This document shows positions 1-60,410 of a DNA stretch of 64,000 nucleotides, piece after piece. The DNA lies in contig NIVC01002889.1 of NCBI GenBank assembly GCA_002269645.1, positions 62,001-126,000 on the forward strand. Direction: 5' to 3'. Each line of letters begins with the position of its first letter. Positions within the stretch are counted from its first letter, which is position 1. Position numbers and translations under genes: made by a program. This DNA comes from Macrostomum lignano (Eukaryota). The notes beneath the pieces were generated by a model that saw only the letters and a list, made by a program, of their open reading frames with translations, searched no databases and was not told the DNA's origin.

Positions 1-876
1 GTGCTGGAGTCGCCCAGCCTGCCAGTCGGCTCGCTGCACATCGTCACCCACGACGGCGCCACTGTTGGCCGCGACCCGGCCGCCCTGCCCACCCTGCTGC
101 TGGCTGGCGACGCCTCGGTGAGCAAGCTGCACTGCCGGATCGAGTACAGCCGGCCGGACAGGCACTTCCAGGCGGTGGACATGGCCAGCCACACCGGCAC
201 GCTGATCGGCGGCCGGCCAATCAGCAACCGGCGCGAGATCAGCCGGCCTGCGGCTCTGCTGCACGGCTGCCGGCTGCGGATCGGCGCCACCGAGTTTCTC
301 TGCCATATTCACCGGTACCCCGGTGAGGCCACCTGTTCCAGGTGCGAGCCCGGTCTTATACAGCGGCCGCAGTCGCCCGTCGCCGATGATTCGCCGAGCA
401 GCGCCCCGGATCGGCGAGCCCAGCTGCGCCAGTTGAAGGCCAAGCACGGCCTCCTGGCGCCGGCAACTGGCGCGGCCGCCGCGGCGCCTCCGGGCTACGC
501 GGACCGGGCCGCGGCTCGCAGGCGCGAGTTCGGCCTCGACGACGACTCGAGGCAGCTGGAATCAGGCGGCCGGCCGGTTGAACGTCAACAGGCTGCCGCG
601 GCCTCCGTCGATGTGGCGCTGCACGAGCGGGAGAAGTCGAACCCGGGAGTCCGCCTGCTGGCCAGGATGGGCTGGCGGCCGGGCGACGGAGTCGGCGTCG
701 GCGAACGTGCCGAGCGGAGTCTGCGGGAGCCGCTGGGCGCCGCGCCGCGCCTGTCGGAGCGGGCCGGACTCGGCTCCGAGCTCGGCCGGGCAGCGTCGAA
801 CGTCGACGCCGAGGCTGATCGGCGGCGTGCTCGAGTTGCCATGGTGACGCGTGAGCGATACGATCGGATTGGATAA
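1..876 (+). CDS. AGGF1: AGGF1-like FHA + G-patch domain protein, 5'-partial (runs off the window start)
   Basis: FHA-like segment (ATVGR...VSKLHCRIEY...DMASHTGTLIGG) followed by RCEPG...LKAKHGL...Y.DRAAARR and a G-patch (NPGVRLLARMGWRPGDGVG); this order is typical of the AGGF1 C-terminus. Stop TAA at 874-876. Confidence 0.8.
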   Translation: MLESPSLPVGSLHIVTHDGATVGRDPAALPTLLLAGDASVSKLHCRIEYSRPDRHFQAVDMASHTGTLIGGRPISNRREISRPAALLHGCRLRIGATEFLCHIHRYPGEATCSRCEPGLIQRPQSPVADDSPSSAPDRRAQLRQLKAKHGLLAPATGAAAAAPPGYADRAAARRREFGLDDDSRQLESGGRPVERQQAAAASVDVALHEREKSNPGVRLLARMGWRPGDGVGVGERAERSLREPLGAAPRLSERAGLGSELGRAASNVDAEADRRRARVAMVTRERYDRIG

Positions 877-4629: not shown

Positions 4630-6369
4630 TCAGCAAGTGGTCACGACCATGACGCAGCCGCCGTCGGCGCTGCCGGCACTTCGGCAGCCGCCCGATCGCT
4701 TCCTAGCCCTCAGCGGCTGCTCTGCATCATTTCTCTCCCTAGAGCCGTCGGGCTCCGTTTCCTCTGCACCATCGCCGACGCTGCCGCCGCCGCCGCCGGC
4801 GTCGCCCCGGCACAGATAGCGCACTATCTGGATTAGCAAATCCATGATCTCCACAATCCAGATCAGCGTCACGCCGATCCACATCGAGAACAGGCCTCCA
4901 ACCTGGCTCAGCGTGCTGGGCAGGGTGCGCACCGCCTTTTCCTCGAACACCTTCACCATGTGGTCCTTCTTGGCGATCTTCACCGTGAGGAAGCTGCGGC
5001 TGATCAAGCTGTCCTCGTGCAGCGCCGCCGCGGCGCCCGGCTCGCCTCTTTTCAGCGCCTTCTTGATATTGGCGTAGTGTTGGACAATCTCTTTGTAGTG
5101 ACCGCCCCTGCCGCGCTCGCTATGGCTGAGCATGCCGGCAAAGTCCAGGTGGAACGAGTGCCTCGGCCAGCCGGCCTGGGACACGATGGTCTCGTAGGTG
5201 TAGTGAAAGCACGGCTCCCCGCACTGGCCCGTGCTGTTGTGCGCGATGCCGTTGTAGCATCGGGACGCCTTGGCCGCCCGGTTCAACTGGTCGGCGGTGA
5301 TGTTCGCGACGCTGCCGAACGCCTCGCAAGGCCGGAGATCCCGGCTGGCCAGGCCTGGTGGCTCCGGCAGGGTGGCTGTGTAGCAGCCGCACTTGGCCAC
5401 GATGGTGGCCTGCTTGCTCAGGCTGTCGCACAGGCGCGAGCTGTAGGCGAACTCCTCCCCGGAGGCCACGCGCAGTCTGGCGGGCACCTCGCCGCTGCAC
5501 TGGCCCCAGGGCGGCTCCAGCCGATGCCAGGCATTTGGCACAATCTTCACCTCGGTGAAGGTGCCCGGCATGACGTTGAAGCCGTCCTTGCTGATGTCCG
5601 GGTAGGAGCCCTGCTCGTGCAGCACCAGCCGAGCGCCCCAGGCCAGCGTGTTGACGTCCACCATGAGACAGTCGATACAGTAGCTCTCGTTTGCTGAGTA
5701 GTCCAAGAACACCTGCATCTCCGTATAGATCACCTTGCTGGCGTACTCCGGCCTGATGTTGTACATGTAACAGTTCAGATGGTCGGGGTGGTCGATGCGC
5801 CGCCACTCTCCGATCTCGTGACAAAGGATGTGGCCGACCGGCGGCTCTTCGTTGGGTTTGAGGACCACGGCGAAGCACTTGGTGACCAGCTGGTTGATGC
5901 TGTGGCCCAGCTCCGTGTAGTTGAAGTCCTTGTCGGGCAGGTTGTACCAATAGTGCAGGTGATTCAGCAGGCTGTTCTTGTACGGGTCCATGGTGCCGTT
6001 GCTGGTGGCCGAGATCAGCCTGAGCAGGGCGCGCCAGTACTGCCTGGGCGTTGGCCAGCCGCGCTCCCTGATAACCTCCCGGCCCCGCCGAGACAGCGGG
6101 TTCTGATTGCACAGCGTGAAGCTCGGGAACGTGGCGCTTTGGTCCAGCCGACTTTTCGGCTGCTGAATGGTGTCGAACTGCAGGTACTGGCGCACGATCT
6201 CGTGCAGGTTGACCAGGCAGCCGATGAACAGGCCGGAGACGCAGACCAGCCACATGATTCTGATCCAGCCTTTGGCGCGGACAATCTGCGGAATGCCCCG
6301 CAGCGAGGTGCGCATAGCAAAGCTGACAAAGATCTGGCGCATGCCGCCCGGCCGCCTGGCCTGACCCAT
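4630..6369 (-). CDS. DEG/ENaC (amiloride-sensitive, FaNaC/ASIC-like) channel subunit, single exon, 579 aa
   Basis: Pre-TM1 TSLRGIPQI, TM1, FPSFTLCNQNP signature, Cys-rich thumb (CDSL...KCGCY...C...C.EPC...Y), TM2 TLPSTLSQVGGLFSMWIGVTLIWIVEI. Confidence 0.93.
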   Translation of the reverse strand: MGQARRPGGMRQIFVSFAMRTSLRGIPQIVRAKGWIRIMWLVCVSGLFIGCLVNLHEIVRQYLQFDTIQQPKSRLDQSATFPSFTLCNQNPLSRRGREVIRERGWPTPRQYWRALLRLISATSNGTMDPYKNSLLNHLHYWYNLPDKDFNYTELGHSINQLVTKCFAVVLKPNEEPPVGHILCHEIGEWRRIDHPDHLNCYMYNIRPEYASKVIYTEMQVFLDYSANESYCIDCLMVDVNTLAWGARLVLHEQGSYPDISKDGFNVMPGTFTEVKIVPNAWHRLEPPWGQCSGEVPARLRVASGEEFAYSSRLCDSLSKQATIVAKCGCYTATLPEPPGLASRDLRPCEAFGSVANITADQLNRAAKASRCYNGIAHNSTGQCGEPCFHYTYETIVSQAGWPRHSFHLDFAGMLSHSERGRGGHYKEIVQHYANIKKALKRGEPGAAAALHEDSLISRSFLTVKIAKKDHMVKVFEEKAVRTLPSTLSQVGGLFSMWIGVTLIWIVEIMDLLIQIVRYLCRGDAGGGGGSVGDGAEETEPDGSRERNDAEQPLRARKRSGGCRSAGSADGGCVMVVTTC

Positions 6370-15527: not shown

Positions 15528-16737
15528 CTAGCGTGGCCCCGGTCTGTAACCCTCGTCCTCGAAATTGTGTTTCACGCGGAACTCGTACCTCTGCTTCTGC
15601 GTCTCGTACTTCTCCAGCTTCTCCTCGATGTCGTCCTCCTCGGACTCGCTATCCGCCATGCCAATCAGGGTGGCCGCCATGACGCCGGCGCACTTGGAGC
15701 GTTTTTTGTGCACAACCCAGCGCTCTTTGTCGCTGCAGTGGCAGCCGCAACGGCAGTAAGCTTGTCGTCGATGGTAATTTGGAACGTATGGAGGCAGAGA
15801 ACTTGCTGGGGAATATAGTGTGGAGCGTGTAGTGCAATAGTAGAATAGAGAGTGGTTAATTCATATTTTTAACTTTCAATGATTAAACTGTAAAGTATGA
15901 TTAAAATAAAATCAAAAGTAAACAGCGACCATTCTGAAAATCTTTCAGTCAACGCTGGACTCCGCCACTGCACTTACCAAAGCTGTGTGCGTTTTATGCA
16001 GCTTAGTGTCTGTCTGCCTGTCTCACTGACTATTGAGTTATCGATTGGGCACCCCATGCGCCCACCAACCCATCTGTCACCCCATGCGCCCACCACCCAA
16101 TCTGTCACCCCATGCGCCCACCACCCCATCTGTCACCCCATGCACCCACCACCCCATCTGTCACCCCATGCGCCCACCACCCCATCTGTCACCCCATGCG
16201 CCCACCACCCCATCTGTCACCCCATGCGCCCACTATCCCATCTGTCACTGGAACCCATGCGCCCACAACCCTTTCACTCCATGCGCCCACCATCCCATCT
16301 GTCACCCCATGCATCCAACAACCCATCTTGCACCACATGCGCCTCGACACTCCAGCAGACATCGCGAGGTTTAATTACTATATATTGCGAATTGCTTTCA
16401 TCTGTTTTCAATATATCAAAGCTAAACTATCGCCTGCCCTGTTTTGCCACATTGTCTTGCTCAGTTAAACTCTAAATGACGCAACAATACGACCTATATT
16501 CTGATTAGATTCCAGTTCACAAATCGCCAACTCACAATTTTTCCTAACACACGCCGACGACGCTGGCTGCTCCGCTTGCAGCTCGTCGACGGCAGCAGCA
16601 ACGGCTGCCGCCGACGACTCAGGAGAGTCGCCACAGCCGCCGCCGCCGCCGTCGCTACTGATGCTGCTGTTGTTGCTCTTCCTCAGGCGGTCTCGCCGAA
16701 GTCTACGAGTAGACTGAGCACTGCTGCTGTCCGACAT
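15528..16737 (-). CDS. Uncharacterised protein; exons 16737-16536 and 15805-15528 (further small 3' exons at ~14150-12250 are possible)
   Basis: ATG at 16737; donor AAT T|GTGAGT (phase 1); acceptor CCCAG|CA (phase 1). The join gives an open frame MSDSSSAQ...RKN|SSSLPPYVPNYHRRQAYCRCGCHCSDKERW...ADSESEEDDIEEKLEKYETQKQRY with GC-rich coding-like composition. Confidence 0.6.
16050..16335. repeat. Intronic 28-bp minisatellite (ccccatctgtcaccccatgcgcccacca)
   Basis: Tandem copies; explains the repetitive ORFs at 15897-16475. Confidence 0.9.
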
Positions 16738-18695: not shown

Positions 18696-19308
18696 CTATA
18701 ATAAATCCTGTCATTCGGCAAAAACTCGTCCCGTTCTCGTCCTTATCAAAAGTTCCCAACTGAAAGCCGTAATCAACAGTGAAAGATTCCAAGCGTTGCT
18801 AGTGAAAAATCTCAAGTAAGTACATTTCTTTGAGAAATAGGACTCTCCATTGCTTTCTTGGCTCTCTTGCCTCAAGCGACACCCTGCAGCTGGGCTGCAC
18901 TTTTGGCTACTGGCACCCGGCAACAATCCGGATGACACAGCGGCCTTCATTTCCTGCTCGTTTCCTTGTATTCGAAAGCTCGAAATGTAGAATCTTACAT
19001 GCATGGCTTACGCTTAGTGTAATGTTGAAAGTTTTCTTATAAAAAGTACATTTGCACTCTGTTGACAGCCTAACGGGTGTCCCAAAAAGGTGAAATTTTA
19101 AACCAAAACTGTGCAAGACTATCTGCTCTTGGTTCCTAGCAACCGCAAATGCTGCTGAGAGTCAACATTCATAAGATTTGCTTCCCGCAGTTCTTATTTC
19201 AATTCATGAGAAACATCATCGCCATTGAAAGAATGAGTGAATGCCACAGACAAGAGGCTTATTTCTTATTTCGATTGATTTCGAATGATTCGAACTTGGC
19301 GTGAGTTG

Positions 19309-22300
19309 TCACACGCTTGACTCCTGCAGCATCACGGTTTCCACTCGCTTCTTCACCCCATCTGGTGCCGCAACGGCGGTGCCGCCCACCTGCGTGTCGA
19401 TGGCAGCCGGCCGGCAGCCGCAGCACCGTCTGGCGAGTCCGCACAGCCGGCTGGCCAGCAGGGCCTCGCGGAATTCCGCGTTGGCAGCGAAGTGGGCCAC
19501 GGCGGAGGCGGCCATGCTGGACTTGGCGCAGAGCAGCGCGGCGCGCACCAGAGAGCGGTGCAGCCGGCTGTGCTGCCGGATTGGCGAGGCCACGGCGACC
19601 GCAGCGGTGACGGCGTAGGGCGCCCAGCACAGCAGGAAGGCGCCTTGAAGGCGGAGCGAATGGTGACTTGATTTAATGGTCAGGCAAATGGCCTCAGATG
19701 GAGTGCCTAAAGCAGGGACAAACACCATATTCTGTGACCAACACCATATTCTGTGACCAACACCATATTCTGTGACCAACACCAGATTCTGTGACCAACA
19801 CCATATTCTGTGACCAACACCATATTCTGTGACCAACACCATATTCTGTGACCAACACCATATTCTGTGACCAACACCAGATTCTGTGACCAACACCATA
19901 TTCTGTGACCAACACCATATTCTGTGACCAACACCATATTCTGTGACCAACACCATATTCTGTGACCAACACCATATTCTGTGACCAACACCATATTCTG
20001 TGACCAACACCATATTCTGTGACCAACACCATATTCTGTGACCAACACCATATTCTGTGACTAACACCATATTCTGTGACCAACACCATATTCTGTGACC
20101 AACACCATATTCTGTGACCAACACCATATTCTGTGACCAACACCATATTCTGTGACCAACACCATATTCTGTGACCAACACCAGATTCTGTGACCAACAC
20201 CATATTCTGTGACCAACACCATATTCTGTGACCAACACCATATTCTGTGACCAACACCATATTCTGTGACCAACACCATATTCTGTGACCAACACCATAT
20301 TCTGTGACCAAAACCATATTCTGTGACCAACACCATATTCTGTGACCAACACCATATTCTGTGACCAACACCATATTCTGTGACCAACACCATATTCTGT
20401 GACCAACACCATATTCTGTGACCAACACCATATTCTGTGACCAACACCATATTCTGTGACCAACACCATATTCTGTGACCAACACCATATTCTGTGACCA
20501 ACACCATATTCTGTGACCAACACCATATTCTGTGACCAACACCATATTCTGTGACCAACACCATATTCTGTGACCAACACCATATTCTGTGACCAACACC
20601 ATATTCTGTGACCAACACCATATTCTGTGACCAACACCATATTCTGTGACCAACACCATATTCTGTGACTAACACCATATTCTGTGACCAACAGCATATT
20701 CTGTGACCAACACCATATTCTGTGACTAACACCATATTCTGTGACCAACACCAGATTCTGTGACCAACACCATATTCTGTGACCAACACCATATTCTGTG
20801 ACCAACACCATATTCTGTGACCAACACCATATTCTGTGACCAATGGGCACATTTGCAACCGACAGCTCAGCCGCAGCCATTGCGCGGCGCATCTGAAGGC
20901 TGCGTACGGCTGTTCAGTCCAAGGACTGGGGGTCGCCACACACCCTCAATTACCCCAGCTAATACTGGCACCCATTTTACAGCTGGGTGAACTGAAGCAA
21001 TGCAGAGTTAAGTGTCTTGCTCAAAGACACAAATTGTTCCGAGTGGGAATCGAACCCCCGACCTTTCATTCGTGAGACCGACGCTCTAACCACTAGACTA
21101 CAACCCTCTTTCTAGTACATCCCGTGTGAGCGTGTGCATGAGCGCAAGCCTGAGTACAGTATTGGCGCGCTTGTATGTGCTCAGGAGGCAGCGGAATGAG
21201 CAGAATTGCCTCAGCACTGGTTCTGAAACTATGTCACGGAAGAAGTGCAATATATTATTATACTACACTGTAGAAGTCGAAAGCAATCCTCACCGATCAC
21301 ACACAGGATGTGGATTGCAACGCGGCGCTCCCGCCTCAGCTGGCTCTCAGCCTGCAAACTGCTCATCTGCCGCTTCGCCTGCAGCTGGAATGTCAAAGTT
21401 GCGATGGCAGCTGGGTAAGCAAAGACAGGACTCGGTTTGAAACACCGACACTAGAAATCATTCACTGAGGCACAGTAAGAATTTGAAGTGGAAGCAGTTT
21501 ACGTAGAACAAGAGCTTCCAGTAGAAGGCTGCATATGCTGAGACATAATGAAATATAGAAAGTAGAAATTGAAATACAGGAGTGGCCGCGTTCTCAAAGC
21601 ACAGCCGGAGACATGATGAAAACGACACAAGGAAAACAAAGACTCAAATCACTGGACACAGGTGCTCACGTAGGCGAAGATCTTCCAGTAGGACACGCAG
21701 ACACCAAGACATCGGGTGAAGCAGACACAGGATGAAATACACACAATGAAATAGACACAGGAGGACACAGACCCAAGCCTCAGCATGAGACACAGGTGCT
21801 CACGTAGGCGAAGATCTTCCAGTAGGACACGCAGACACCAAGACATCGGGTGAAACAGACACAGGATGAAATACACACAATGAAATAGACACAGGAGGAC
21901 ACAGACCCAAGCCTCAGCATGAGACACAGGTGCTCACGTAGGCGAAGATCTTCCAGTAGGACACGCAGACACCAAGACATCGGGTGAAACAGACACAGGA
22001 TGAAATACACACAATGAAATAGACACAGGAGGACACAGACCCAAGCCTCAGCATGAGACACAGGTGCTCACGTAGGCGAAGATCTTCCAGTAGGACACGC
22101 AGACACCAAGACATCGGGTGAAACAGACACAGGATGAAATACACACAATGAAATAGACACAGGAGGACACAGACCCAAGCCTCAGCATGAGACACAGGTG
22201 CTCACGTAGGCGAAGATCTTCCAGTAGGACACGCAGACACCAAGACATCGGGTGAAACAGACACAGGATGAAATACACACAATGAAATAGACACAGGAGG

Positions 22301-23100
22301 ACACAGACCCAAGCCTCAGCATGAGACACAGGTGCTCACGTAGGCGAAGATCTTCCAGTAGGACACGCAGACACCAAGACATCGGGTGAAACAGACACAG
22401 GATGAAATACACACAATGAAATAGACACAGGAGGACACAGACCCAAGCCTCAGCATGAGACACAGGTGCTCACGTAGGCGAAGATCTTCCAGTAGGACAC
22501 GCAGACGATAACCAGTGGCAGAAGGAACTGTGCGGTGAGCAGACTCAGCCAGTATGCCCGGTGCCCGGACTCGCGGCTCGACCAGTTCAGATCACAGGTG
22601 GACACGGAGCGAACGGCGACGAACAGTGAGTCGCTGACGACAATGGGTAGCATCCATAGCAACGACATGGCAACCAGGCAAGCGATGAGTCGGACAGCAG
22701 CTCGGGTGGACACACTGCGGCTGGTGAGGATGGACCGGCAGCGAAGAAGCGACAGCGCGGTGAGCACGTTCAGCGACGTGAGGCCCAGCCAGCCAGTCCA
22801 GAAGACGTACCAGCGACAGTACCAGCTGGGGAAGCGCCACTGCGGTCTCCAGGCCGCGTGTACATTCAGCAGAGCGGCCAGGATGCTGCAGAGACAATTG
22901 CTGATGAAGCTGGCGCACAACAGCCAGGAGAAGCCGTTCCACAGGGACTTCGAGACAATGTGAGTGTAGGCGGCCAGTCCGTTGGCGCTGATGGCCGTGG
23001 CGAAGATGAGGGAGAAGCTGGTCGCGTCGATGTAGCGCTCCAGGTCTGTCGGTGTGTCTTCTTCCGCCGCTGAGGTCGCGTTGACTGTGCCGGCCTGCAT
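19309..23100 (-). CDS. Divergent opsin (class A GPCR with retinal-binding Lys296 equivalent); exons 23100-22474, 20892-~20851, ~19692-19309
   Basis: TM1-5 in exon 1 (WRFPSWYC, STCDLNW, FLLPLVIVCVSYWKIFAY|GTGAGC). Acceptor TTCAG|ATG gives IFAY|MRRAMAAAELSVAN. TM6 GAFLLCWAPYA; TM7 LCAKSSMAASAVAHFAANAEFREAL aligns without gaps to rhodopsin F293-R314. The exon 2/3 junction is uncertain. Confidence 0.8.
19720..20843. repeat. 19-bp minisatellite (caccatattctgtgaccaa), ~59 units, between opsin exons 2 and 3
   Basis: Near-perfect tandem array. Confidence 0.98.
20945..21106 (-). mobile_element. CORE-type (MIR-like) SINE with tRNA-derived head
   Basis: The minus strand reads tgtagtctagtggttagagcg...ggttcgattccc (Pol III A and B boxes). 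The plus strand cccattttacagctgggtgaactgaagcaatgcagagttaagtgtcttgctcaaagacaca resembles the reverse-complemented MIR/CORE domain as I recall it. Confidence 0.7.
21117..21232 (+). mobile_element. Fragment of dispersed tRNA-SINE family (body only)
   Basis: gtgtgagcgtgtgcatgag...cagtattggcgcgcttgtatgtgctcagg...gcggaatgagcagaattgcctc matches copies at 23.9, 33.4 and 37.1 kb. Confidence 0.75.
21655..22505. repeat. 134-bp tandem repeat (6 full units + 1 partial) containing the opsin exon-1 3' end and its splice donor
   Basis: cacaggtgctcacgtaggcgaagatcttccagtaggacacgcag recurs at 21657, 21791, 21925, 22059, 22193, 22327 and 22461. Confidence 0.97.
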
Positions 23101-28803: not shown

Positions 28804-29676
28804 TCAGTTGTACATCCGGTACCTCTTGTACTCCGCAACAGCCGGTTTGTACTTCATCCACAGGCCGCTCGTGGCCAGGTCCCGGTCCACCTGGAAGTCG
28901 CGAAATTCCACGTGACGGCAGGTGGCAGTGGACTCCATGTACAGGGCGCTGGTGCACACGGAGTTGCTGGCGGCCTCGACTAGGCAGTCAACTAGACTCA
29001 ATTTGCCGGGTACAACGCTCGAGCAGTACTCATTCGGCTGGCGATAGCCGTGGGCGGCAAATTTGGCTCGCTGCCAGAAGTTGACGCCAACTGCGCGGCT
29101 GGCAGCTACGGTGGACAGCGGCAGGCACAGCAGGGAGTGCAGCTCAGAGCAGTTGGCGAACTCCAGGCCGTCGCTGCTCGGGCGGTAGAGCACGCAGTCT
29201 ACTGGATCTGAGCTACTGTTGGCCGCCTTCTCGTCAATGTAGGTATTGGCAGCGGTTGTCGAATAGCTGCTGTTAGTCCGTAGAGCGTACTGCTTAGCGA
29301 ACCTGTTTCTTAGTGCAGACTCAGCAGCGATGGCTCGCGCAGTCAGTCCAGTCCAGAATGCTACATCACCGGTCAGGTTCAGCTTCATCAGGCTGACGGC
29401 CGCGTCAGAGCTCAGCGAGCTGACGGCCAGTCTGCCACCAGCTGATCGACAGGCCCGTGCGGCGCTGCACCAGGTGTGCAACGGACTGACGGTTGCCATG
29501 GCGCAGGTGGAATTGTCCAACTGGAAAGGAAACCCGGCGTTGGATGAGCAGTTGACGTCTTTGAGCTCAGCTGGGGTAGTCTCAAAGTCCATGGAGGGAA
29601 ACCTCTGGCCGAACGCACCGTCAAAGAGGCAGCAGACAGGGAGTACCGCGAATAGAAGCAGCAGCAGTGACCGCAT
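28804..29676 (-). CDS. Secreted protein: signal peptide + C-type lectin-like domain + PAN/apple-like Cys domain, 290 aa
   Basis: MRSLLLLLFAVLPVCC signal; TWCSAARACRSAGGRLA...FWTGL...DCVLY...ANCSELHSLLC CTLD pattern; C-terminal SLVDCLVEAASNSVCTSALY.ESTATC. A small alternative last exon near 28707 is possible. Confidence 0.7.
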   Translation of the reverse strand: MRSLLLLLFAVLPVCCLFDGAFGQRFPSMDFETTPAELKDVNCSSNAGFPFQLDNSTCAMATVSPLHTWCSAARACRSAGGRLAVSSLSSDAAVSLMKLNLTGDVAFWTGLTARAIAAESALRNRFAKQYALRTNSSYSTTAANTYIDEKAANSSSDPVDCVLYRPSSDGLEFANCSELHSLLCLPLSTVAASRAVGVNFWQRAKFAAHGYRQPNEYCSSVVPGKLSLVDCLVEAASNSVCTSALYMESTATCRHVEFRDFQVDRDLATSGLWMKYKPAVAEYKRYRMYN

Positions 29677-35100: not shown

Positions 35101-38100
35101 GAGCGGTGTGAGTGATGACGCGCCCAGCAACAGGCGGGAAAGTGCAGGGACTTCCCTGTCCTGGCCAGCTGCTGCCCGGCTGATCGATGGCAATCGAAAA
35201 GCGGCTGCAGGGATCGATTAGTGACAGTCGGGGCAGGCTTGGGACACTGCAGAGCACAGCTCTCACGCGGCCGGCATGTTTGCTGAGGAATCGGAATGAG
35301 CAACCAAATTAGCGCGGAGTTGGGTATTCTTGCACTCTGCCGCTGGCCTCTGTGCGAGTCTTTTAATTGTGCCCAGCTGGAGATTTTAGACTCGTGGAGT
35401 GCCCCAAATTATGGGTTCTCTTCAAGCACCATAGTTTTGATGCGAAAGTGGCATTGAGTCTGAGCTTAAATCCTAAGCTTAAGGCTTGAATCCCGGGAGC
35501 TCACAGATAGAGAGCACATGGACAACTTAAGTAAGGTATCGAAGGGACGCATGATTGAGCGCGCATTTTGAAACTGCTCCACGTGACACAAGCGCGAATT
35601 TCAACTGCTTGACTCTGGAGCAAGAGCGCATCTGAATACAACTTGAGCTCGAGTGATTTATGGCGTAGATGTTTTATGGGTATCTTGATGATTTAGCCCC
35701 TCCCCTCAAGTGAGCGCAGTTCAAGTGTATACAGAATATTCTCGAGGCTACGGGTCTAACGTATGAGGCTAGATAGGAGGGTCGCTAGTCAGGCAGGTGA
35801 TGTACATCTTTTGAAGTCCTAAATGTGCGATGAGTACCTACAATTGTCTGCGCGCTTCTGCCCGTGCGCGCTTATGTCGAATATTGTAAAAAATACACAT
35901 GCGCGCTTATTCTGCCCTCCCGCATCTAACGCCCATCCATCCCATCCCTCAACAGGTAGTGCTCGGGCTGTACGAGAACTCTCGCGTTGTGGACCTGAAC
36001 GACTATTGGCGTTCCGGCTCCTGGGACATCATCGACTGTCCGGGCAACATTAGCATCATCGAGAAGGCCGGCCAGCCGCCGCAGACGATGATCATCTACA
36101 AGCTGTCCATCCGGCGGAAGACCCTCTTCTACACTGTCAACCTCATCATTCCCTGCGTACTCATCTCTTTCCTCAGCGTGTGCGTATTCTACCTGCCGGC
36201 CGACGCTGGCGAGAAGATGACCCTGTGCATCTCCATCCTGCTGGCCCTGGTCGTGTTCCTGCTGCTGGTCAGCAAGATGCTGCCGCCGACCTCAATCTCG
36301 ATCCCCTTGATATCCAAGTTCCTGCTGTTCACATTCATTATGAACATCTTCACCATCGTGTTCACCGTGATCATCATCAACTGGAACTTCCGTACGCCGA
36401 GGACGCACAAGATGCCTCGCTGGGTGCGCGGCTTATTTCTGAAATTTCTGCCCAGGCTGCTGCTGATGAAGCGGCCGGAGCACATCGACCAGGAGGAGCG
36501 GCGCGAGCTCAGCATGGACAAGCTGGGCGAAGGCGGCGGCGGCGACGGCGGCTGCCATCAAAGGCGACTCCGCGGCGGCATCAGCAGCGGTGCTGTCCGG
36601 GTCTGCGGCAATGGCGATGCAGCGAGAACTGCGAGCAGCGCCGGCGATGAGGAAGTCTCTGACCCCGAGGAGGCTGAAGACGAGCCGGATGGAGACAGCG
36701 AGGTAGAGACTGGTGAGACGCGGCGGCGAGGGCGACGGCGAGGTCTAGCCGGGCTGGAGGTGACGCCGGAGCTCCGCAGAGCCATCGCAGCCATCAACTT
36801 CATCTCTACGCACCTGCGCGTTGAGGACGAATACAAGAGGGTTCGTTTTTTTTCTACTGCTTCTTGTGTAGAAGAGGTCGAGGTTGAGTTGTGCTCAAAT
36901 GTCTGGATCAGCCTTTTACTATCAGCTCCATTTTTATTCGAAAGCAGAGCAGCTCAGCGGTAAACGCGTCCGACCCTCGAGCAACGACCCCTGGTTCGAA
37001 TCCGTGCGCGGTCACATTCATTTGGGGCAATTGTGCACGGAAATTGGCCGGGGGTTGTCGTGCGATTCACAGCCATGAGGGCCAATCCCCATAGAGTCGA
37101 TTAGAAAGCCAGGGCCGCTGTGCACCCTGTGTGAGCGCGTGTATGAGTGCGCGTCTGAGTACAGTATTGGGGCGCTTGCATGTGCTCAGGGGTCAGCGGA
37201 ATGGGCAGAACTGCCTCGGTGTGTGAGATGATGTTGCCGAAAGAACATCCGTTTGAAATCACTTTTTGAAAAATTATTTTTTATCTTTCGCATCTTGTCA
37301 GTTGTCAATTTTATTAACAGAATTGCTTCATTTTCAAACATTTTTTCATCAGTTTCCGTCATTTTCATAAATATGCTTATCATTTACCATCTTTCATAAT
37401 CTGATAATCACTAGCTACTGTATCTTTTACTTGCCTTATGGCTTTATTTGATCAATAATTACTAACTAGTAATCATATGTCTTTTTTCATTTTTTATTTA
37501 CCATCGATTGTTCATTCCTTATTATTTACGATTTATGATTTGCGATATGTGCATTATGATTTGTGATTTATGAGTTATGATTTATGGTGTATGCTTTGTG
37601 CTTTTTGATTTGTGATTTTTGGGTTATTATTTGTGATTTGTGATTTGTTATTTGGATTTATGATTTAGATTCATGAGTTATGATTTGTGATTTATGAGTT
37701 ATGATTTATGATCTATGCTTTGTGCTTTTTGATTTGTGATTTGTGATTTGTGGGTTATGCTTTGTGCTTTTTGATTTGTGATTTGTGATTTGTGGGTTAT
37801 GATTTGTGATTTATGAGTTATGATTTATAATCGATGCTTTGTGCTTTTTGATTTTTGATTTGTGATTTGTGGGTTATGCTTTGTGCTTTTTGATTTTTGA
37901 TTTGTGATTTGTGGGTTATGCTTTGTGCTTTTTGATTAGTGGTCTGTGATTTGGATTAATGATTTAGATTCATAATTTATGATTTGTGATTTGGATTTAT
38001 GATTTTTGATTCACTATTTATTATGCATGCTTTATAATTAAAAATGTTATGATTAATGATTTATTATTCAATCCGCGCTCCGAAACTGCCAGGTGCTGCA

Positions 38101-39810: not shown

Positions 39811-41477
<1,667 letters not shown>

Positions 41478-42563: not shown

Positions 42564-43914
42564 TAATCGCTGTGCGCCCGAGGATTTGCCATTGACGCCC
42601 GCAAAGCATGGGCATTACTGTTATTATAGTTAGACTAGGCGTGTTGAAACGGGGAGAAACGCACGGCATCTCGCCCGCTGCAATAATCTATGGCCAACTT
42701 CAATAAGTAAAAAAACTCGTATGCATATAAGTATCTAGTTAATTTTTCTACAACTTAAAGTAAAGCTTAGTGCTGCTTAACAATTCTTAGTATCAGTTAC
42801 TATTTTTTCAATTCGCAAAATAAGGAGTTTTGGCCATAGACAATTTTTGGATTTCATTATTTCTTTCTTTGTCTTGTGTGCCGGTGTGGGGGGGGCTCAG
42901 CGCCCCCTTGACCCCGCTTTCTTCTGACTTTGCCATAGACATTTTCAGCGGGCCGTGAAACCGACTGAATGCATTGGAGTAAATGGGATTTTACCATAGA
43001 CAGTCTCAGCGGCCCGTGAAACGCGGTTTCACGCCCGCTAACTATAACACTAATATGGATGGGCCGCATCGGGCAGAAACGAGCTAACACTCCTCGGCGC
43101 TATTGTGCCATAGACGCAGATCAAGGCTGCGAGAGAAGGAATGGAAGAGCGGGTGCAGGAGCTAAGTTTCAACCATGGACACTTCCATTTGATGAAAACG
43201 AAGCTTTTCACGCAGCACTGCAGTCTATAGAAACAAAAGTTGCAGCACAGTATAAAAGAGATTGAACCAGCAATTTTTCTGGCATTAAATTAAAGTTTTG
43301 ACTTAAAATTTCGTTCGATTCATGCGAGTTTGACTGTAGTCCACGCTCGTACGGTTTTTATGGGATTGATTAAGCGCCTGCCGGGCAAAAGGTTATTGTG
43401 CAATTATACAATATCGATGCTTCTTTAGGTTCAACAATTAAATTACAGATTTGCCAGCTCGTACACCTCTGCAAGATGCGCACTGTCTCCGACTAGATGT
43501 CCAGTGCACTAATCTTTGGGTGCGCATCTCTCAAAGATGACAGTGACAGTGCGCATCTCTCTGCAAGATGCGCACTGCATCTTGCAGAGAGATGGATAGA
43601 TGGTAAAACCACAGTCCCTGTGGGTTTTACAATCCATCAGCTGGATCGCGATTCGCTAAAACACAGGCGCGAGAGAGCATATTAATGCGCTTTTAGCCTA
43701 ACTTGTCAAATGTACACTGCCTACCAAACTCTGCGATTCTGTATAGGTACAAGCTCTGCGTCCAAGTTCTGTCTGTCTGTATCTCTCTCTCCCCCTATCC
43801 TTTCTTTGCTCAGTAATGCGTGACCCTGCAGATAGTAGGCAAAAATAGAGAGAAAGCGCGAATCGTCGGAGAAGCATTTGAAAGCCACCAGTAGAGCTTC
43901 CCAGAGTGCCCGAG

Positions 43915-44832
43915 ATGGAGCCAGTACTGGACGCCAGCGGCCAGCCCATCAGCGGCATCGTCCACACGCCGGATGCTGAGGGTGTCACGGTGAAGAATCG
44001 CCTATGGCGCGGCTACTACGTGTCGGACTTTCCCGAGGCCGAGGTGCGCATGGACAGGCTGTGCGAGTTCAGCCCCAGGCCCGACGACGTGTTCATCTAC
44101 GCTTATTTAAAGTGCGGCACCCACTGGCTGCACGAGATCTGTCACTTCCTGCTGACTGGCCAGGCCGAGGTCCGGCCGCAACCCAAGGAGCTGGCCATGG
44201 TTGAGGCGGCCGACCTTGAAGATTTAGATAAGATCCCATCGCCTCGAGTGCTCAATTGTCACATGCGCTGCTCAATCCTGCCGCAGCGGCTGGTCGCTGG
44301 CAACAAAATTATCTACGTTGTGCGCAATCCCAAGGACACGGCCGTCTCGCTGTACCATCACGTGGCGGGCATAGACGACTACGAGTACAAGGGAAGCTTC
44401 AAAGGGTTCCTGGGCCTGTTCGAGAACGGCACCATGGACGCTGGGTCTTGGTTCAGTCATACCCGAGACTTCCTGACCGCCATGGCCCGAGAAGGCGGCG
44501 GCAACATCCTCATGGTGGAGTTCGAGCGGCTGAAACGGGACCCGGAGTCTCAGATCCGGCGCATCGCCAGGTTCCTGCTCGACATAGACATCTCGGACAG
44601 TCTGCTGACCGCCATCTGCGAGAAGGTGTCCTTCAAGAGCATGCAGAAAGCGCGCAGCAACGATTTCAAAGAGTTCTTCAACGAGCGGGCCAGCCAACAC
44701 GGCTTCTACCGCAAGGGAGAGGTCGGCGATTGGAGAAACTACTTTGATGAGGAGTCCAGCCTCCGCATTGATCGTCTGTGCGCCGAGGCTCTGGCCGGCT
44801 TTGAGAACCTCTATCAGCCCATTTACGAGTGA
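43915..44832 (+). CDS. Cytosolic sulfotransferase (SULT family), single exon, ~305 aa
   Basis: 5'-PSB AYLKCGTHW, catalytic LNCH, 3'-PB RNPKDTAVSLY, FYRKGEVGDWRNYF. ATG at 43915. Confidence 0.95.
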   Translation: MEPVLDASGQPISGIVHTPDAEGVTVKNRLWRGYYVSDFPEAEVRMDRLCEFSPRPDDVFIYAYLKCGTHWLHEICHFLLTGQAEVRPQPKELAMVEAADLEDLDKIPSPRVLNCHMRCSILPQRLVAGNKIIYVVRNPKDTAVSLYHHVAGIDDYEYKGSFKGFLGLFENGTMDAGSWFSHTRDFLTAMAREGGGNILMVEFERLKRDPESQIRRIARFLLDIDISDSLLTAICEKVSFKSMQKARSNDFKEFFNERASQHGFYRKGEVGDWRNYFDEESSLRIDRLCAEALAGFENLYQPIYE

Positions 44833-45841: not shown

Positions 45842-46618
45842 TCAGCGCTGCGCTTGCAGGTTGTCCCTGCACACTTCGTCCCAGTCGGGCCACACGGCCG
45901 CTTTCACTCTGTCAGCGTAGTCGCTCAGATTCCTGGCCCTCTCCATGATGAAGCTCTTGTGCGGGTAGTCAATGGGCAGGTAAAGAATCTGAGCCAGGTG
46001 AGCGAACGCGCTGGCGTCCACGGTGGACAGCTGGTCTCCCAGCATGTACTTCTTGTTGCCAAGTAGCACGGACAGAGCCAGGAGGTCGTCGCAGCCGATC
46101 TGGTAGATCTCCTCAGGCGAGTTCCTGCCGATCCCGTGCTCAGTCAGCCTGCGCTTCGACAGCGTAGGCATGAACGCAGTGAACATCTTCGCCTGCCAGG
46201 CGGGCAGGAACTCCATCAGCGCGATGGTCTCACGGATTCGCTCCACGTAGCGGTAGTAGGCGTAGGAGAAAACAGTCCGATTGTCCAGCACCACGGAGAT
46301 CACCCTGCCCAGGGCCTGCTGCTCAGCGTTGAGCTCGTCAGCTTTGTCGAATTCCTTAGTTAAGAACTGGATGATCAGGGTGGACTCGTTGTACTCCTTG
46401 CCGTTGTACTCAATGAAAGGAATCTGACCTTTGGAGCTGCTGTTCTCAAGCGCCCTGATGGTTTTGTGCGGAATCTGCTTGATGCGCAGCCAGGTCTCCA
46501 GTTTGAGCCCGAACGGGGACGCCGAGACGCAGGTCCGCAGGCTGGGAAAGTTGAACGCGTACACCATGCCTTCGTCGAAGTTTTCAACCTTCAATTTGCT
46601 CGAACTGCTGCCTCCCAT
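45842..46618 (-). CDS. FAXC: Failed-axon-connections / metaxin-like GST-fold protein, single exon, 258 aa; predicted N-myristoylation (MGGSSS)
   Basis: SPFGLKLETWLR, SSKGQIPFIEYNG, ESTLII, LSVLLGNKKYMLGDQLSTVDASAFAHLAQI. Confidence 0.85.
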   Translation of the reverse strand: MGGSSSSKLKVENFDEGMVYAFNFPSLRTCVSASPFGLKLETWLRIKQIPHKTIRALENSSSKGQIPFIEYNGKEYNESTLIIQFLTKEFDKADELNAEQQALGRVISVVLDNRTVFSYAYYRYVERIRETIALMEFLPAWQAKMFTAFMPTLSKRRLTEHGIGRNSPEEIYQIGCDDLLALSVLLGNKKYMLGDQLSTVDASAFAHLAQILYLPIDYPHKSFIMERARNLSDYADRVKAAVWPDWDEVCRDNLQAQR

Positions 46619-47985
46619 GCCTGTAGTTGATTGGAGATAATTTGCTGCTTAGACAATTCTACTGAGCGGTTTGGATTGTCAACTCTGCTTCAGTCTCTGC
46701 TCTTAGCCTTCTCTTTTTTTCTGCCTCTGTCGCACTACCAGCCACTCTTGGGGCAGGCAAAAGCATTTAGTTCATAGAAAACTGTATAGCCAGGCAAATT
46801 CTAAAAAATCTATGCATTTCGTTTCACACCGCAAGGTCTGACCTCGTTTGAGAGTGCGCTAAGGCCTCGCTGATAGCATGTACACTAACGATGAGAACAA
46901 CATACTTACAATTGTCTGTCCCTAGCGTGAGAGACACCTGAGAGAATAATTTCGTTCTCACCGCAACAGATTAGACCATAATTCGAGCCGTAAATTGTCT
47001 GATAAATTTCTTTTCAAATTTCTCAGGCTCATGTCTGGTTAAAGAGATATTTGAGAACTTTTGCTCTACTTTGAATTGCATATTTACTGCTAATAAATGG
47101 ATATTTTTTTCAAATATGATTACATCAATAATTTTAGTTTATTTACGGGGAGGCAACAAAGAAAAGAAAAAAATGTTTGAATAAACAACGATTACATGTA
47201 GCTTATGGCCTTCATGTATAGTCATCTGTTTAAAGCAAAAAGTATTTTCCCTGAAAACTTGATATCTAGCCTATGAGACATCAGCACCCAGCGAGCTTTT
47301 GGCATCAAAGCCGTGGCTTAACCCTGACTCTCCCATTGATGCTTGGCCTACCTACCAACAACTCCCAATTGACTGCTTCAATTTTCGTTTACGGAGCTTT
47401 ATCCAGGCATGCTCCAGGTCACCTTCGTTCCAAAATATTCCCCCATCCTTTTAGAACTCAGTAGTGGTAGGTAACTTCTCCGAGTTGTTTAACACACTTT
47501 TGAGCGGCCATTATTTCACACTTTTAAGTTTGATTTGATTGGATGAGAGATGGGGTGGGTGAACTGATCGGTCACTTGGGCAGAGAGTATGATGTACATT
47601 GGTTACACTTGGCGAGGGACAGCTGAATTGACAATCAGATAAGATAATTGGCGACTCCATAACTTAGTACGAGTAATAAATTTATAATTAGCTTAATAAA
47701 ATCCGAGCAGTCGCTGAATGGTGCAATAATTACCGCTTGGACTTGTCATTGTGTCTGGATAAAAGTTCTTCGCAATGTCTATCCAACTCAGATTTACACG
47801 TACGTACCTAGTTGTACTCTACCGGGCAAAGAGTCGGCCTGACTTTATTGCGCAACCCAGCTGGTGAGGGTTGAGATAGAAATGAAAAGGGAGACCTAGT
47901 CTGCGATTCAACTAGTGTCTTGAGTGACAGGTGCAGGACAACTACAGTACATCTGACTGAAGCCAGAGAGCCGACAAGCCGACAC

Positions 47986-60305: not shown

Positions 60306-60349
60306 GCATGCAGTTACACGGCGCTTTAGTCGATTAGTAGAAGGGCTAA

Positions 60350-60410
60350 GCCCCAAGGCAGACACAGTGTGTGTACATCAGGGCCCGCTGTACATCTTGC
60401 GTGAGCATTC
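60350..60410 (+). mobile_element. Short tRNA-SINE family fragment immediately upstream of the Akt start codon
   Basis: ccccaaggcagacacagtgtgtgtacatcagggcccgctgtacatcttgcgtgagc resembles the body at 23897-23975. Confidence 0.55.

What the first reader, a model, noticed from the sequence alone, without database searches (positions are those of the whole stretch)
19309..23100. Highly divergent opsin: Lys296 kept, but no E113/E181 counterion, no DRY and no NPxxY
Seen, using bovine rhodopsin numbering anchored on C110, C187, K296 and N310/F313/R314: K296 is present (LCAKSS); position 113 = Y; 181 = V (VRSVSTC187); 94 appears to be N; 188 = D; the E/DRY position reads LRC; NPxxY reads SAVAH; the NKQ tripeptide reads NAE. 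Established: most opsins use E113 or E181 as Schiff-base counterion; DRY/NPxxY support G-protein activation and are eroded in photoisomerase-type opsins (RGR/retinochrome). Inference: a non-signalling retinal isomerase/carrier, a UV pigment with an unprotonated Schiff base, or a pigment using an unusual counterion (D188 or an anion). This is the best candidate for new biology in the window.
Basis: partly seen in the sequence, partly recalled or inferred. Interest (0 to 1): 0.75.

Follow-up and report, generated by a model that had tools for sequence, protein, structure and literature searches.

The report
Divergent flatworm xenopsin lacking a counterion
This is an intact, previously mis-annotated light-receptor (opsin) gene of the flatworm Macrostomum lignano, of the xenopsin lineage, that keeps its retinal-binding lysine and pocket but has lost the usual charge partner and signalling motifs. 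It is probably an accessory or atypical pigment, and related flatworm opsins with degraded motifs are already known.

Summary
Window 19309-23100 (minus strand) holds an intact 3-exon gene for a 350-aa class-A GPCR. It has K296, C110/C187, Y113, V181, D188, N83, LRC in place of E/DRY, SAVAH in place of NPxxY, and NAE in place of NKQ.

The organism is Macrostomum lignano. The only public model of this locus is a chimeric protein, partly read out of frame, named "cyclin-dependent kinase inhibitor".

It is an opsin by descent. 131 of its 149 best hits among 1.84 billion representative proteins carry the TM7 lysine. Its two introns match the two xenopsin introns in position and phase (Lingula, Mya, Pecten), and match none of the c-opsin, r-opsin, ASO-II, Amphiop6 or peropsin-like genes tested. 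A home-made ML placement puts it on the stem of polyclad "xenopsin B", with moderate support.

A 38%-identical paralogue elsewhere in the genome shares every unusual residue. The two are 78% identical at retinal-pocket positions against 38% at other TM positions, so the pocket is under selection.

Function is inferred, not shown. The likeliest reading is a retinal-binding opsin with weak or no canonical G-protein signalling (photoisomerase or retinal store, or a UV pigment). D188 or an anion is the only candidate counterion.

Novelty is moderate: flatworm xenopsin B with eroded motifs and counterion-less ASO-II opsins are both published.

The parts
22474..23100 (-). Exon 1, codons 1-209. It covers the N-terminus with an N-glycosylation site (NAT), TM1-TM5, and ECL2 with C187 and D188.
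   Evidence: The ATG is at 23100. The donor is TAC|GTGAGC after 22474, phase 0.
21385..22473 (-). Intron 1, phase 0, after bovine-equivalent residue 229. This is xenopsin conserved intron 1.
   Evidence: The position and phase are the same in Lingula P0002, Mya P0008, Pecten P0118 and the paralogue MligB.
21655..22506 (-). A 134-bp tandem array, 6.4 copies at 99% identity. It duplicates the last 33 nt of exon 1 plus the splice donor, leaving six decoy donors inside intron 1.
21294..21384 (-). Exon 2, 91 nt. It encodes ICL3 and the start of TM6 (LQAKRQMSSLQAESQLRRERRVAIHILCVI + 1 nt).
   Evidence: The acceptor is ttccag|CTGCAG and the donor is ATCG|GTGAGG.
19644..21293 (-). Intron 2, phase 1, inside bovine-equivalent codon 259 in TM6. 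This is xenopsin conserved intron 2. It contains a 19-bp minisatellite (19717-20843, 59 copies) and a SINE-like repeat (20894-21111).
19309..19643 (-). Exon 3. It encodes TM6 (CWAPY), TM7 with K296, helix 8, the palmitoylation cysteines, the C-terminal tail and the TGA stop.
19522..19524 (-). Codon for Lys280 (= bovine K296), the Schiff-base lysine, in the motif LLCAKSS.
22738..22746 (-). LRC, standing in the place of E/DRY (bovine 134-136). R135 is retained.
   Evidence: The paralogue also reads LRC, and Prostheceraeus vittatus xenopsin B2 reads LRH.
22591..22614 (-). The ECL2 hairpin segment VRSVSTCD, with V181, T186, C187 and D188. There is no Glu at 181. D188 is the only conserved acidic residue near the pocket.
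19474..19506 (-). SAVAH (in place of NPxxY) followed by FAA and then NAE (in place of NKQ).
22897..22899 (-). Asn68, standing in the place of D83 (2.50).

Best explanation
Shown:
- Window 19309-23100 (minus strand) encodes an intact three-exon, 350-aa opsin gene of Macrostomum lignano.
- Both of its introns are of the xenopsin type.
- It has a 38%-identical paralogue, MligB, elsewhere in the genome that carries the same unusual residues.

Inferred:
- The pair is the macrostomid representative, or sister, of the polyclad 'xenopsin B' group.
- The protein still folds as a 7TM opsin. It most likely still binds retinal through a Schiff base at K296, inside a conserved opsin-type pocket (W167, F212, F261, W265, Y268, A295).
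- It has no acidic residue at 94, 113, 181 or 292. It also lacks D83, the acidic residue of E/DRY, and N302/P303 of NPxxY.
- It is therefore unlikely to work as a canonical visible-light pigment that activates a G protein.

Most likely mechanism: it is an accessory retinal-binding opsin. It would act either as a photoisomerase or retinal store serving other photopigments, or as a UV-absorbing pigment with an unprotonated Schiff base. If the Schiff base is protonated, the charge partner would have to be D188 on the ECL2 beta4 strand, which faces the pocket side in the bovine register, or a bound anion.

Confidence splits into two parts. About 0.85 for 'intact opsin gene of the xenopsin lineage'. 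About 0.4 for 'non-canonical, accessory or UV function'.
For: Identity as an opsin:
- Pfam 7tm_1 scores 7e-23.
- The best solved-structure sequence match is squid rhodopsin, with the lysines aligned.
- In an exhaustive HMMER search of 1.84 billion representative proteins, 131 of the 149 best hits have Lys at 296. The top hits are Lingula xenopsin XP_013397676, a Tripedalia cnidopsin, amphioxus and insect c-opsins, and a Mya xenopsin-like protein.
- AlphaFold gives pLDDT 86.4 and pTM 0.84, with 7 TM helices, helix 8 and an ECL2 hairpin. The top Foldseek hits are squid rhodopsin.
- Pocket composition favours opsin over non-opsin by +21 to +22 bits.

Xenopsin lineage:
- Both introns (after residue 229, phase 0; inside codon 259, phase 1) are identical in position and phase to those of Lingula, Mya and Pecten xenopsins.
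- They are absent from amphioxus and Asterias c-opsins, Nematostella ASO-II, Amphiop6, Mytilus r-opsin and a nemertean peropsin-like gene.
- This fits the published statement that xenopsins share two conserved introns, the first close to a c-opsin intron and the second unique (PMC5648526, PMC7529461).
- ML placement puts the pair on the polyclad xenopsin B stem. LWR is about 1, delta-lnL is 8-9, and RELL support is 0.54-0.63. The result survives removal of the motif sites.
- The pair shares derived states with xenopsin B: L134, loss of P303, and E312.

Selection:
- The paralogue keeps N83, Y113, LRC, V181, D188, L292, K296 and SA-x-A.
- Identity is 25/32 at pocket positions against 75/195 at other TM positions, p = 2.7e-5.
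- GC3 is 83%.

Precedents:
- Xenopsin B has been proposed as a photoisomerase (PMC6805122).
- ASO-II opsins use Cl- as a counterion (PMC12401545).
Against: - No expression, retinal-binding or spectral data exist for this gene.
- Overall sequence is so divergent that NJ attaches the pair to non-opsin GPCRs with 22% bootstrap.
- Family HMMs do not discriminate. The non-opsin HMM scores MligA at 171 bits against 160 for the xenopsin HMM.
- RELL support for the xenopsin-B placement is only moderate, and both lineages are long branches.
- Polyclad xenopsin B keeps an Asp at or near 181 and keeps D83, so the match is imperfect.
- R135, Y223 and E247 are retained, and Y306 is retained in MligB, so G-protein or arrestin coupling cannot be excluded.
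- Known photoisomerases (retinochrome, RGR) keep the E181 counterion (my own knowledge, not checked here). A counterion-less isomerase would itself be unusual.
- The pocket-residue list was taken from knowledge of the bovine structure, not measured on this model.
Confidence: 0.55

Rival explanations
1. It is a working sensory photopigment that signals through a G protein or arrestin. It would stabilise a protonated Schiff base with an unconventional counterion, either D188 in ECL2 or a bound chloride, as in coral ASO-II opsins.
For: - D188 is the only acidic residue on the extracellular/TM side that both paralogues conserve, and Asp is rare at this site among 146 opsins.
- In the bovine hairpin register seen in the AF2 model, residue 188 faces the same side as 186 and 181 (plus inference).
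- Basic residues cluster in ECL2 and at the top of TM7 and could hold an anion: R182 in MligA, R179/R180/H183 in MligB, and R282 and R285 in both.
- ASO-II opsins show that Cl- can be the native counterion (PMC12401545).
- R135, Y223, E247, helix 8 (N310, F313, R314) and the palmitoylation cysteines are kept.
Against: - ASO-II opsins need E292 and keep NPxxY. Here residue 292 is Leu and N302/P303 are lost.
- In MligB, R179 would pair with D188 across the hairpin and could neutralise it (inference).
- D83 and the acidic residue of E/DRY are both lost.
- V114 and L292 add bulk next to the Schiff base.
Confidence: 0.25
2. It is a decaying or non-functional gene copy, either a recent pseudogene or a gene that is never expressed.
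For: - Six decoy copies of the exon-1 donor lie in intron 1. Use of any of them would cause a frameshift and a premature stop.
- The public model of this locus (UniRef A0A1I8F2D3) reads exon 3 in three frames. That could reflect indels in another assembly or haplotype.
- MligA has lost Y306, which MligB keeps.
Against: - The 1053-nt ORF is intact over three exons with canonical splice sites.
- GC3 is 83%, against 45-48% GC in the introns.
- The pocket is 78% identical to that of a paralogue that is only 38% identical overall, p = 2.7e-5.
- Both introns are conserved in phase with xenopsins.
- The frame changes in the public model are as well explained by model or assembly error.
Confidence: 0.08
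3. It is not an opsin by descent. It would be a flatworm-specific class-A (peptide-type or orphan) GPCR that acquired a Lys at 7.43 by convergence and does not bind retinal.
For: - NJ groups the pair with non-opsin GPCRs at 22% bootstrap.
- An HMM built from the non-opsin hits scores MligA slightly higher than the xenopsin HMM.
- SSTR3 and GALR1 score close to rhodopsins in the PDB sequence search.
- Foldseek hits include many peptide receptors.
- Flatworm-specific orphan rhodopsin-like GPCRs do exist (PMC6114109).
Against: - The 17 best hits in the exhaustive search are all opsins, and the best non-opsin hit is 23 bits lower.
- Two introns match xenopsins in position and phase.
- The AKSS motif, G121, Y268, A269, A272 and A295 give +21 to +22 bits for opsin pocket composition.
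- ML placement on the outgroup stem is 9 lnL units worse, with RELL support 0.13-0.20.
Confidence: 0.05

Closest known systems
Flatworm (polyclad) xenopsin clade B. Examples are Prostheceraeus vittatus xenopsin B2 (DAB27258) and Stylochus ellipticus xenopsin B (DAB27259). Described in PMC5648526, PMC6805122 and PMC7529461.
   Same: - Same phylum.
- K296 is kept while NPxxY and the tripeptide are degraded.
- DRY is replaced by L-R-x (LRH in P. vittatus B2, LRC here).
- P303 is lost and residue 312 is Glu.
- E211 occurs in MligB.
- A (L/I)(R/Q)RE(R/Y)R(V/I) block precedes TM6.
- ML placement puts the Macrostomum pair on this clade's stem.
- The published suggestion of a photoisomerase role fits.
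   Different: - Polyclad B proteins keep an Asp at or near 181 with an ECL2 two residues shorter. They also keep D83 and Y306, and read DS-x-IY and LPE.
- The Macrostomum proteins read V181, N83, SA-x-A-H/Y and N-A/S-E.
- Pairwise similarity to polyclad B is no higher than to other xenopsins or to c-opsins.
- Intron positions of polyclad B genes were not available to compare.
- Xenopsins were reported as not found in macrostomids (PMC6805122) or in flatworm genomes (PMC10097855).
Canonical xenopsins. Examples are Lingula anatina XP_013397676, the Terebratalia transversa 'ciliary opsin' F1D8E5, and Maritigrella crozieri xenopsin.
   Same: - Highest-scoring relatives.
- Both conserved introns are identical in position and phase.
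- Y113, W167, W191 and the CW-x-PY/SW-x-PY motif are shared.
- Helix 8 carries N310..F313-R314.
   Different: - Canonical xenopsins keep D83, DRY, E181, N/DPxxY and usually NxQ.
- Maritigrella xenopsin forms a photopigment that lowers cAMP in a light-dependent manner, consistent with Gi (PMC6805122).
- None of those residues is present here.
Anthozoan-specific opsins II (ASO-II, for example Acropora tenuis Antho2a). Described in PMC12401545.
   Same: - No acidic residue at 94, 113 or 181.
- The E/DRY motif is degenerate.
- They show that an opsin can use an exogenous anion as counterion.
   Different: - ASO-II opsins have E292, needed for Cl- binding and as the photoproduct counterion. They also keep NPxxY and activate a G protein.
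- Here residue 292 is Leu and NPxxY is lost.
- The introns differ: Nematostella ASO-II has introns at 150 (phase 2) and 227 (phase 2).
- They are cnidarian only.
Photoisomerase opsins: RGR, retinochrome and peropsin (group-4 / tetraopsins).
   Same: - The G-protein-activation motifs are eroded.
- A non-signalling, retinal-recycling role is the working analogy for how this protein may act.
   Different: - They belong to a different opsin clade.
- They keep the E181 counterion (established knowledge, not tested here).
- A nemertean peropsin-like gene shares none of the introns.
- No tetraopsin appears among the named top hits.
Amphioxus Amphiop6.
   Same: K296 is present together with N83, no Glu at 113 or 181 (T113, Q181), DRC in place of DRY, and NYVVY in place of NPxxY.
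   Different: - It comes from a deuterostome.
- Its gene structure is entirely different, with six introns and none shared.
- It is not close in any analysis.

Membership tests
Animal (type II) opsin | Seven-transmembrane class-A GPCR fold | tested here: met
   Pfam 7tm_1 scores 7e-23. The AF2 model has pTM 0.84 with 7 TM helices plus helix 8. Foldseek TM-score to squid rhodopsin is 0.77.
Animal (type II) opsin | Lys at bovine position 296 (7.43) in TM7 for the retinal Schiff base | tested here: met
   K280 aligns with the retinal lysine in the HMMER alignment and in the MAFFT alignment. It is conserved in the paralogue.
Animal (type II) opsin | Nearest relatives in sequence space are opsins | tested here: met
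   131 of the 149 best hits carry K296. The top 17 are all opsins.
Animal (type II) opsin | Acidic counterion at 113 or 181 (or at 94 or 292 in special cases) | tested here: not met
   Both paralogues read Y113, V181, N94 and L292. ASO-II opsins show that this feature is not strictly required for membership (PMC12401545).
Animal (type II) opsin | Binds retinal and responds to light | not testable with these tools
   There is only indirect support. Pocket residues are conserved at 25/32 between the paralogues and their composition is opsin-like.
Xenopsin | Two conserved introns of fixed position and phase (PMC5648526, PMC7529461) | tested here: met
   The introns lie after residue 229 (phase 0) and inside codon 259 (phase 1). 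They are the same in MligA, MligB, Lingula P0002, Mya P0008 and Pecten P0118. They are absent from six non-xenopsin opsin genes.
Xenopsin | Falls inside the xenopsin clade in a phylogeny | tested here: inconclusive
   NJ is unresolved, with long-branch attraction to the outgroup. A home-made ML placement puts the pair on the xenopsin B stem, with RELL support 0.54-0.63. No standard ML or Bayesian software was available.
Xenopsin | NxQ tripeptide and C-terminal VxPx motif (clade A signature, PMC6805122) | tested here: not met
   The tripeptide reads NAE or NSE, and there is no VxPx motif in the tail. Clade B lacks these too.
Flatworm xenopsin clade B | K296 retained while NPxxY and the tripeptide are strongly modified | tested here: met
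   The description comes from PMC6805122 and PMC7529461.
Flatworm xenopsin clade B | Specific sequence affinity to the polyclad B proteins | tested here: inconclusive
   ML placement favours it, and L134, loss of P303 and E312 are shared. However, phmmer scores to the B proteins are not the highest, and the state at 181 differs.
ASO-II opsins | E292 assisting a Cl- counterion, with NPxxY kept, in anthozoans | tested here: not met
   Residue 292 is Leu, NPxxY is lost, and the introns differ.
RGR / retinochrome / peropsin | Membership of the group-4 clade, with an E181 counterion | tested here: not met
   The named top hits are xenopsins, cnidopsins and c-opsins. The peropsin-like gene has different introns. 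Residue 181 is Val.

The most novel reading that the evidence does not exclude
The Macrostomum pair could be functional visible-light pigments whose protonated Schiff base is balanced by Asp188 on the ECL2 beta4 strand, or by an anion held by ECL2/TM7 arginines. That would be a counterion solution not yet described in bilaterian opsins. They would signal, or isomerise retinal, without D2.50, the acidic residue of E/DRY or NPxxY. They may be expressed in the putative ciliary photoreceptors described in macrostomids.
Probability: 0.15. Interest if true: 0.75.

Novelty: new variant of a known kind. Interest (0 to 1): 0.5.

Why it matters
- **Taxonomic gap.** Xenopsins were reported as not found in macrostomids (PMC6805122). 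A genome survey found flatworms to possess only r-opsins and retinochromes (PMC10097855). This locus and its paralogue show that an early-branching rhabditophoran keeps two xenopsin-lineage genes. They were probably missed because their public gene models are chimeric or truncated.
- **Timing of the split.** If the placement holds, the divergent xenopsin-B-like lineage predates the split between macrostomids and polyclads.
- **A natural experiment.** The pair combines a strongly conserved retinal pocket with complete loss of the known counterion sites and of three activation microswitches. It therefore probes what an opsin does when it neither tunes a protonated Schiff base in the usual way nor couples canonically.
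- **Testability.** The photoisomerase, UV-pigment and new-counterion ideas could be tested directly in M. lignano, an established laboratory model.
- **Limit on surprise.** Degraded xenopsin B and counterion-less ASO-II opsins are both already published.

Tried and rejected
- **Word-indexed homologue searches.** I searched with the protein and with a two-paralogue profile. Both returned only the chimeric M. lignano model, so the method is too insensitive for this divergence.
- **NJ tree.** A neighbour-joining tree with Kimura distances attached the pair to non-opsin GPCRs at 22% bootstrap. I treat this as long-branch attraction and not as evidence.
- **Family HMM scoring.** It could not separate opsin from non-opsin affinity, so I did not use it for classification.
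- **dN/dS between the paralogues.** I did not attempt it. Their ML distance is 1.35 substitutions per site, so synonymous sites are saturated. I used pocket against non-pocket identity instead.
- **Foldseek.** It confirms the fold and ranks squid rhodopsin first, but peptide receptors follow closely. It is not diagnostic.
- **tRNA scan.** ARAGORN found nothing in the tRNA-like stretch of intron 2.
- **Alternative exon-2 acceptor.** An acceptor at 21410 was rejected because it breaks the frame. The acceptor at 21384 is in phase and matches the homologous xenopsin intron.
- **Public-model look-up.** An exact-sequence look-up of the public chimeric model found no contig.
- **ASO-II membership.** Considered and rejected on three grounds: residue 292 is Leu, the introns differ, and the taxon differs.
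- **RGR/retinochrome membership.** Considered and rejected on relatives and introns.


Full report
**What is at the coordinates.**
Translating the minus strand of 19300-23100 gives three coding blocks joined by canonical GT..AG introns.
- Exon 1 is 23100-22474. The ATG is at 23100 and there is no upstream in-frame ATG. The donor is TAC|GTGAGC, phase 0.
- Exon 2 is 21384-21294. The acceptor is ttccag|CTGCAG and the donor is ATCG|GTGAGG, phase 1.
- Exon 3 is 19643-19309 and ends in TGA.

The spliced ORF is 1053 nt, or 350 aa, and is uninterrupted. CDS GC is 64.6% and GC3 is 83%, against 45-48% GC in the two introns. The exons therefore still have coding-type composition.

**Checking the residue calls.**
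I used three independent registers:
- the HMMER pairwise alignment to squid rhodopsin;
- a 134-sequence MAFFT L-INS-i alignment containing bovine rhodopsin, whose landmark residues I verified by index;
- the ECL2 beta-hairpin of an AlphaFold model, with strands at 160-163 and 168-171, so that V163 = 181, T168 = 186, C169 = 187 and D170 = 188.

- D83 (2.50) is Asn.
- Residue 292 is Leu.
- Residue 114 is Val, where all 138 other opsins in the alignment that have a residue there have Gly or Ala.
- R135, Y223, E247, CWxPY and the helix-8 cysteines are retained.

No alignment puts an acidic residue at 181. The only Asp upstream of C187 in ECL2 is equivalent to bovine 175, and the paralogue does not conserve it.

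**Organism and annotation status.**
The only hit of two word-indexed searches is UniRef A0A1I8F2D3 from Macrostomum lignano, named "Cyclin-dependent kinase inhibitor". It maps wholly onto this window:
- It starts in exon 2.
- It reads the exon-3 region in three different frames.
- It then joins an exon of the downstream gene at 15531-15842, at 100% identity.

So the window is M. lignano, and the public model of this locus is a chimera. That explains why the gene is not annotated as an opsin. Whether the frame changes in that model are assembly errors or a real frameshifted haplotype cannot be decided here. In this window the frame is intact.

**Is it an opsin?**
- Pfam gives only 7tm_1, at 7e-23.
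- Against solved structures, squid rhodopsin is best (54.6 bits), but SSTR3 (50.6) and GALR1 (48.6) are close.
- The exhaustive HMMER search of 1.84 billion representative proteins is clearer. It gave 994 hits, and 131 of the 149 best carry Lys in the K296 column.
- The named top hits are Lingula anatina XP_013397676, a Tripedalia cnidopsin, amphioxus c-opsins, insect pteropsin-type opsins, a Mya opsin and Asterias opsins. The Lingula protein is treated as a xenopsin in PMC7529461. Maritigrella xenopsin and the Terebratalia "ciliary opsin", now classed as a xenopsin, are also among the hits.
- The best non-opsin hit scores 23 bits below the best opsin.
- Across 32 retinal-pocket positions, the residues of both Macrostomum proteins favour opsin over non-opsin composition by 21-22 bits. 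I took the position list from knowledge of the bovine rhodopsin structure.
- The AlphaFold model is confident (pLDDT 86.4, pTM 0.84) and shows the opsin-type ECL2 hairpin and helix 8. Foldseek ranks squid rhodopsin first, but other class-A receptors follow closely.

**A paralogue with the same oddities.**
A partial M. lignano protein (PAA90994.1) appeared among the hits. I fetched its locus (L001, GCA_002269645.1 contig NIVC01000099.1) and reconstructed a full four-exon gene, MligB, of 376 aa.
- It is 38% identical to the window protein, MligA.
- It shares every unusual state: N83, N94, Y113, V114, LRC, V181, D188, L292, K296, SALAY and NSE.
- Identity between the two is 25/32 at pocket positions against 75/195 at other helix positions (Fisher p = 2.7e-5).

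An old duplicate pair has therefore kept both the pocket and its peculiar residues. That argues for purifying selection on a ligand pocket and against a decaying gene.

**Which opsin lineage?**
Gene structure gives the clearest evidence.
- MligA's two introns lie after bovine-equivalent residue 229 (phase 0) and inside codon 259 (phase 1).
- MligB has the same two, plus one more in codon 112.
- I mapped exon structures of related genes from their genomic loci. Lingula P0002, Mya P0008 and Pecten P0118 have exactly these two introns in the same phases.
- Six other genes have neither intron:
  - amphioxus c-opsin: 120 (phase 1), 232 (phase 0), 312 (phase 0);
  - Asterias c-type opsin: 120, 185, 232, 312;
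  - Nematostella ASO-II: 150 and 227;
  - Amphiop6: six other sites;
  - Mytilus r-opsin: 63 and 108;
  - a nemertean peropsin-like gene: 100, 144, 184, 252.
- This matches the published rule. Xenopsins share two conserved introns, the first close to a c-opsin intron (229/230 against 232/233, both phase 0) and the second unique (PMC5648526, PMC7529461).

Sequence phylogeny is weaker.
- An NJ tree attaches the pair, which groups at 99% bootstrap, to the non-opsin outgroup at 22% bootstrap. This is a typical long-branch artefact.
- Family HMMs do not discriminate.
- I took labelled xenopsin A and B sequences from the supplement of PMC6805122 and wrote a small ML placement. It used a BLOSUM62-derived rate matrix with four gamma categories, a 159-taxon backbone and 289 sites.
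- The pair is placed on the stem of the polyclad flatworm xenopsin B clade. The likelihood-weight ratio is about 1, and the best non-xenopsin-B placement is 8-9 lnL units worse.
- RELL support is 0.54-0.63 for xenopsin B edges against 0.13-0.20 for outgroup edges. The result is stable to the choice of alpha and to removal of the motif sites.
- Both lineages are long branches, so I call this moderate support.

Polyclad xenopsin B shares L134 (LRH in P. vittatus B2), loss of P303 and E312. It keeps D83, an Asp at or near 181 in a shorter ECL2, and Y306.

**What it probably does (inference).**
- The pocket and K296 are conserved, so retinal binding is likely.
- No acidic residue sits at any established counterion site (94, 113, 181, 292).
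- The only conserved acidic residue on the extracellular/TM side is D188. In the bovine hairpin register it lies on the same face as residues 186 and 181.
- Basic residues are frequent in ECL2 and at the top of TM7.
- D83, the acidic residue of E/DRY, and N302/P303 are all lost. R135, Y223 and E247 remain.

I rank the readings as follows:
- about 0.4 for an accessory retinal-binding opsin with weak or no canonical G-protein signalling (photoisomerase or store, or a UV-absorbing pigment with an unprotonated Schiff base);
- about 0.25 for a signalling pigment that uses D188 or an anion as counterion;
- low for a pseudogene or a non-opsin.

A photoisomerase role has been suggested in print for xenopsin B (PMC6805122). 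Döring et al. note that several flatworm xenopsin B sequences have strongly modified NPxxY and tripeptide motifs (PMC7529461). A chloride counterion is established for coral ASO-II opsins, but those need E292 (PMC12401545), and here that residue is Leu.

**Novelty.**
Xenopsins were reported as not found in macrostomids (PMC6805122) or in flatworm genome surveys (PMC10097855). A full-text search found no paper describing a Macrostomum xenopsin. The gene pair is therefore a new and more extreme variant of a known kind, and not a new category.

Noticed in passing
window 21655-22506: A 134-bp tandem array (6.4 copies, 99% identical) begins inside exon 1. It repeats the last 33 coding nt (VCVSYWKIFAY) plus the GTGAGC donor. 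Intron 1 therefore holds six decoy donors, at 134-bp spacing. Because 134 is not a multiple of 3, use of any decoy would cause a frameshift and a stop.
   Followed up: partly
window 19717-20843: A 19-bp minisatellite (GACCAACACCATATTCTGT, 59 copies, 98% identical) fills much of intron 2. It stays open in frame, so it creates a spurious 527-aa ORF fused to exon 3 in mechanical ORF lists.
   Followed up: yes
window 20894-21111; L001 22213-22456: A repeat of about 220-245 bp in intron 2, with a tRNA-like look, is 82% identical to a segment just downstream of the paralogue's last exon. ARAGORN calls no tRNA. It is probably a dispersed SINE-like element.
   Followed up: partly
window 15531-15842 and 19312-21366: UniRef A0A1I8F2D3, named 'Cyclin-dependent kinase inhibitor', is a chimeric gene model. 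It joins opsin exon 2 and the exon-3 region, read in three frames, to an exon of the downstream gene at 15531-15842.
   Followed up: yes
L001 8351-21405 (M. lignano NIVC01000099.1): The public models of the paralogue (PAA90994.1, A0A1I8H915, A0A1I8J5A0) are truncated or read through into an intron. A full four-exon gene of 376 aa can be reconstructed. It has an extra intron, phase 2, in the codon of the Trp aligned with bovine 112, which MligA lacks.
   Followed up: yes
L003, L006, L008: The Mya xenopsin, amphioxus Amphiop6 and a Mytilus r-opsin share an intron after bovine-equivalent residue 108, phase 1. This may be an ancient opsin intron, or the result of recurrent insertion at the same site.
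   Followed up: no
window 1-876, 4630-6369, 28804-29676, 35899-36963, 39811-41128, 43906-44832, 45842-46618, 47920-50950, 54408-60365: The neighbouring ORFs have the following Pfam matches:
- FHA plus G-patch
- amiloride-sensitive Na+ channel (ASC)
- C-type lectin
- Cys-loop receptor TM region
- myo-inositol oxygenase
- sulfotransferase
- GST-like
- ferric-reductase / NOX-like
- AKT-like kinase (PH domain plus kinase domain)

There is no second opsin in the window.
   Followed up: partly
window 40170-41135: A trinucleotide (GTN/ACN-type) microsatellite, several hundred bases long, lies inside the myo-inositol oxygenase locus. It gives poly-V, poly-Y and poly-T ORFs. The window as a whole is unusually rich in minisatellites, for example at 26.1-27.0 kb, 27.5-28.7 kb, 30.3-30.7 kb, 32.4-33.0 kb and 49.7-50.8 kb.
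   Followed up: no
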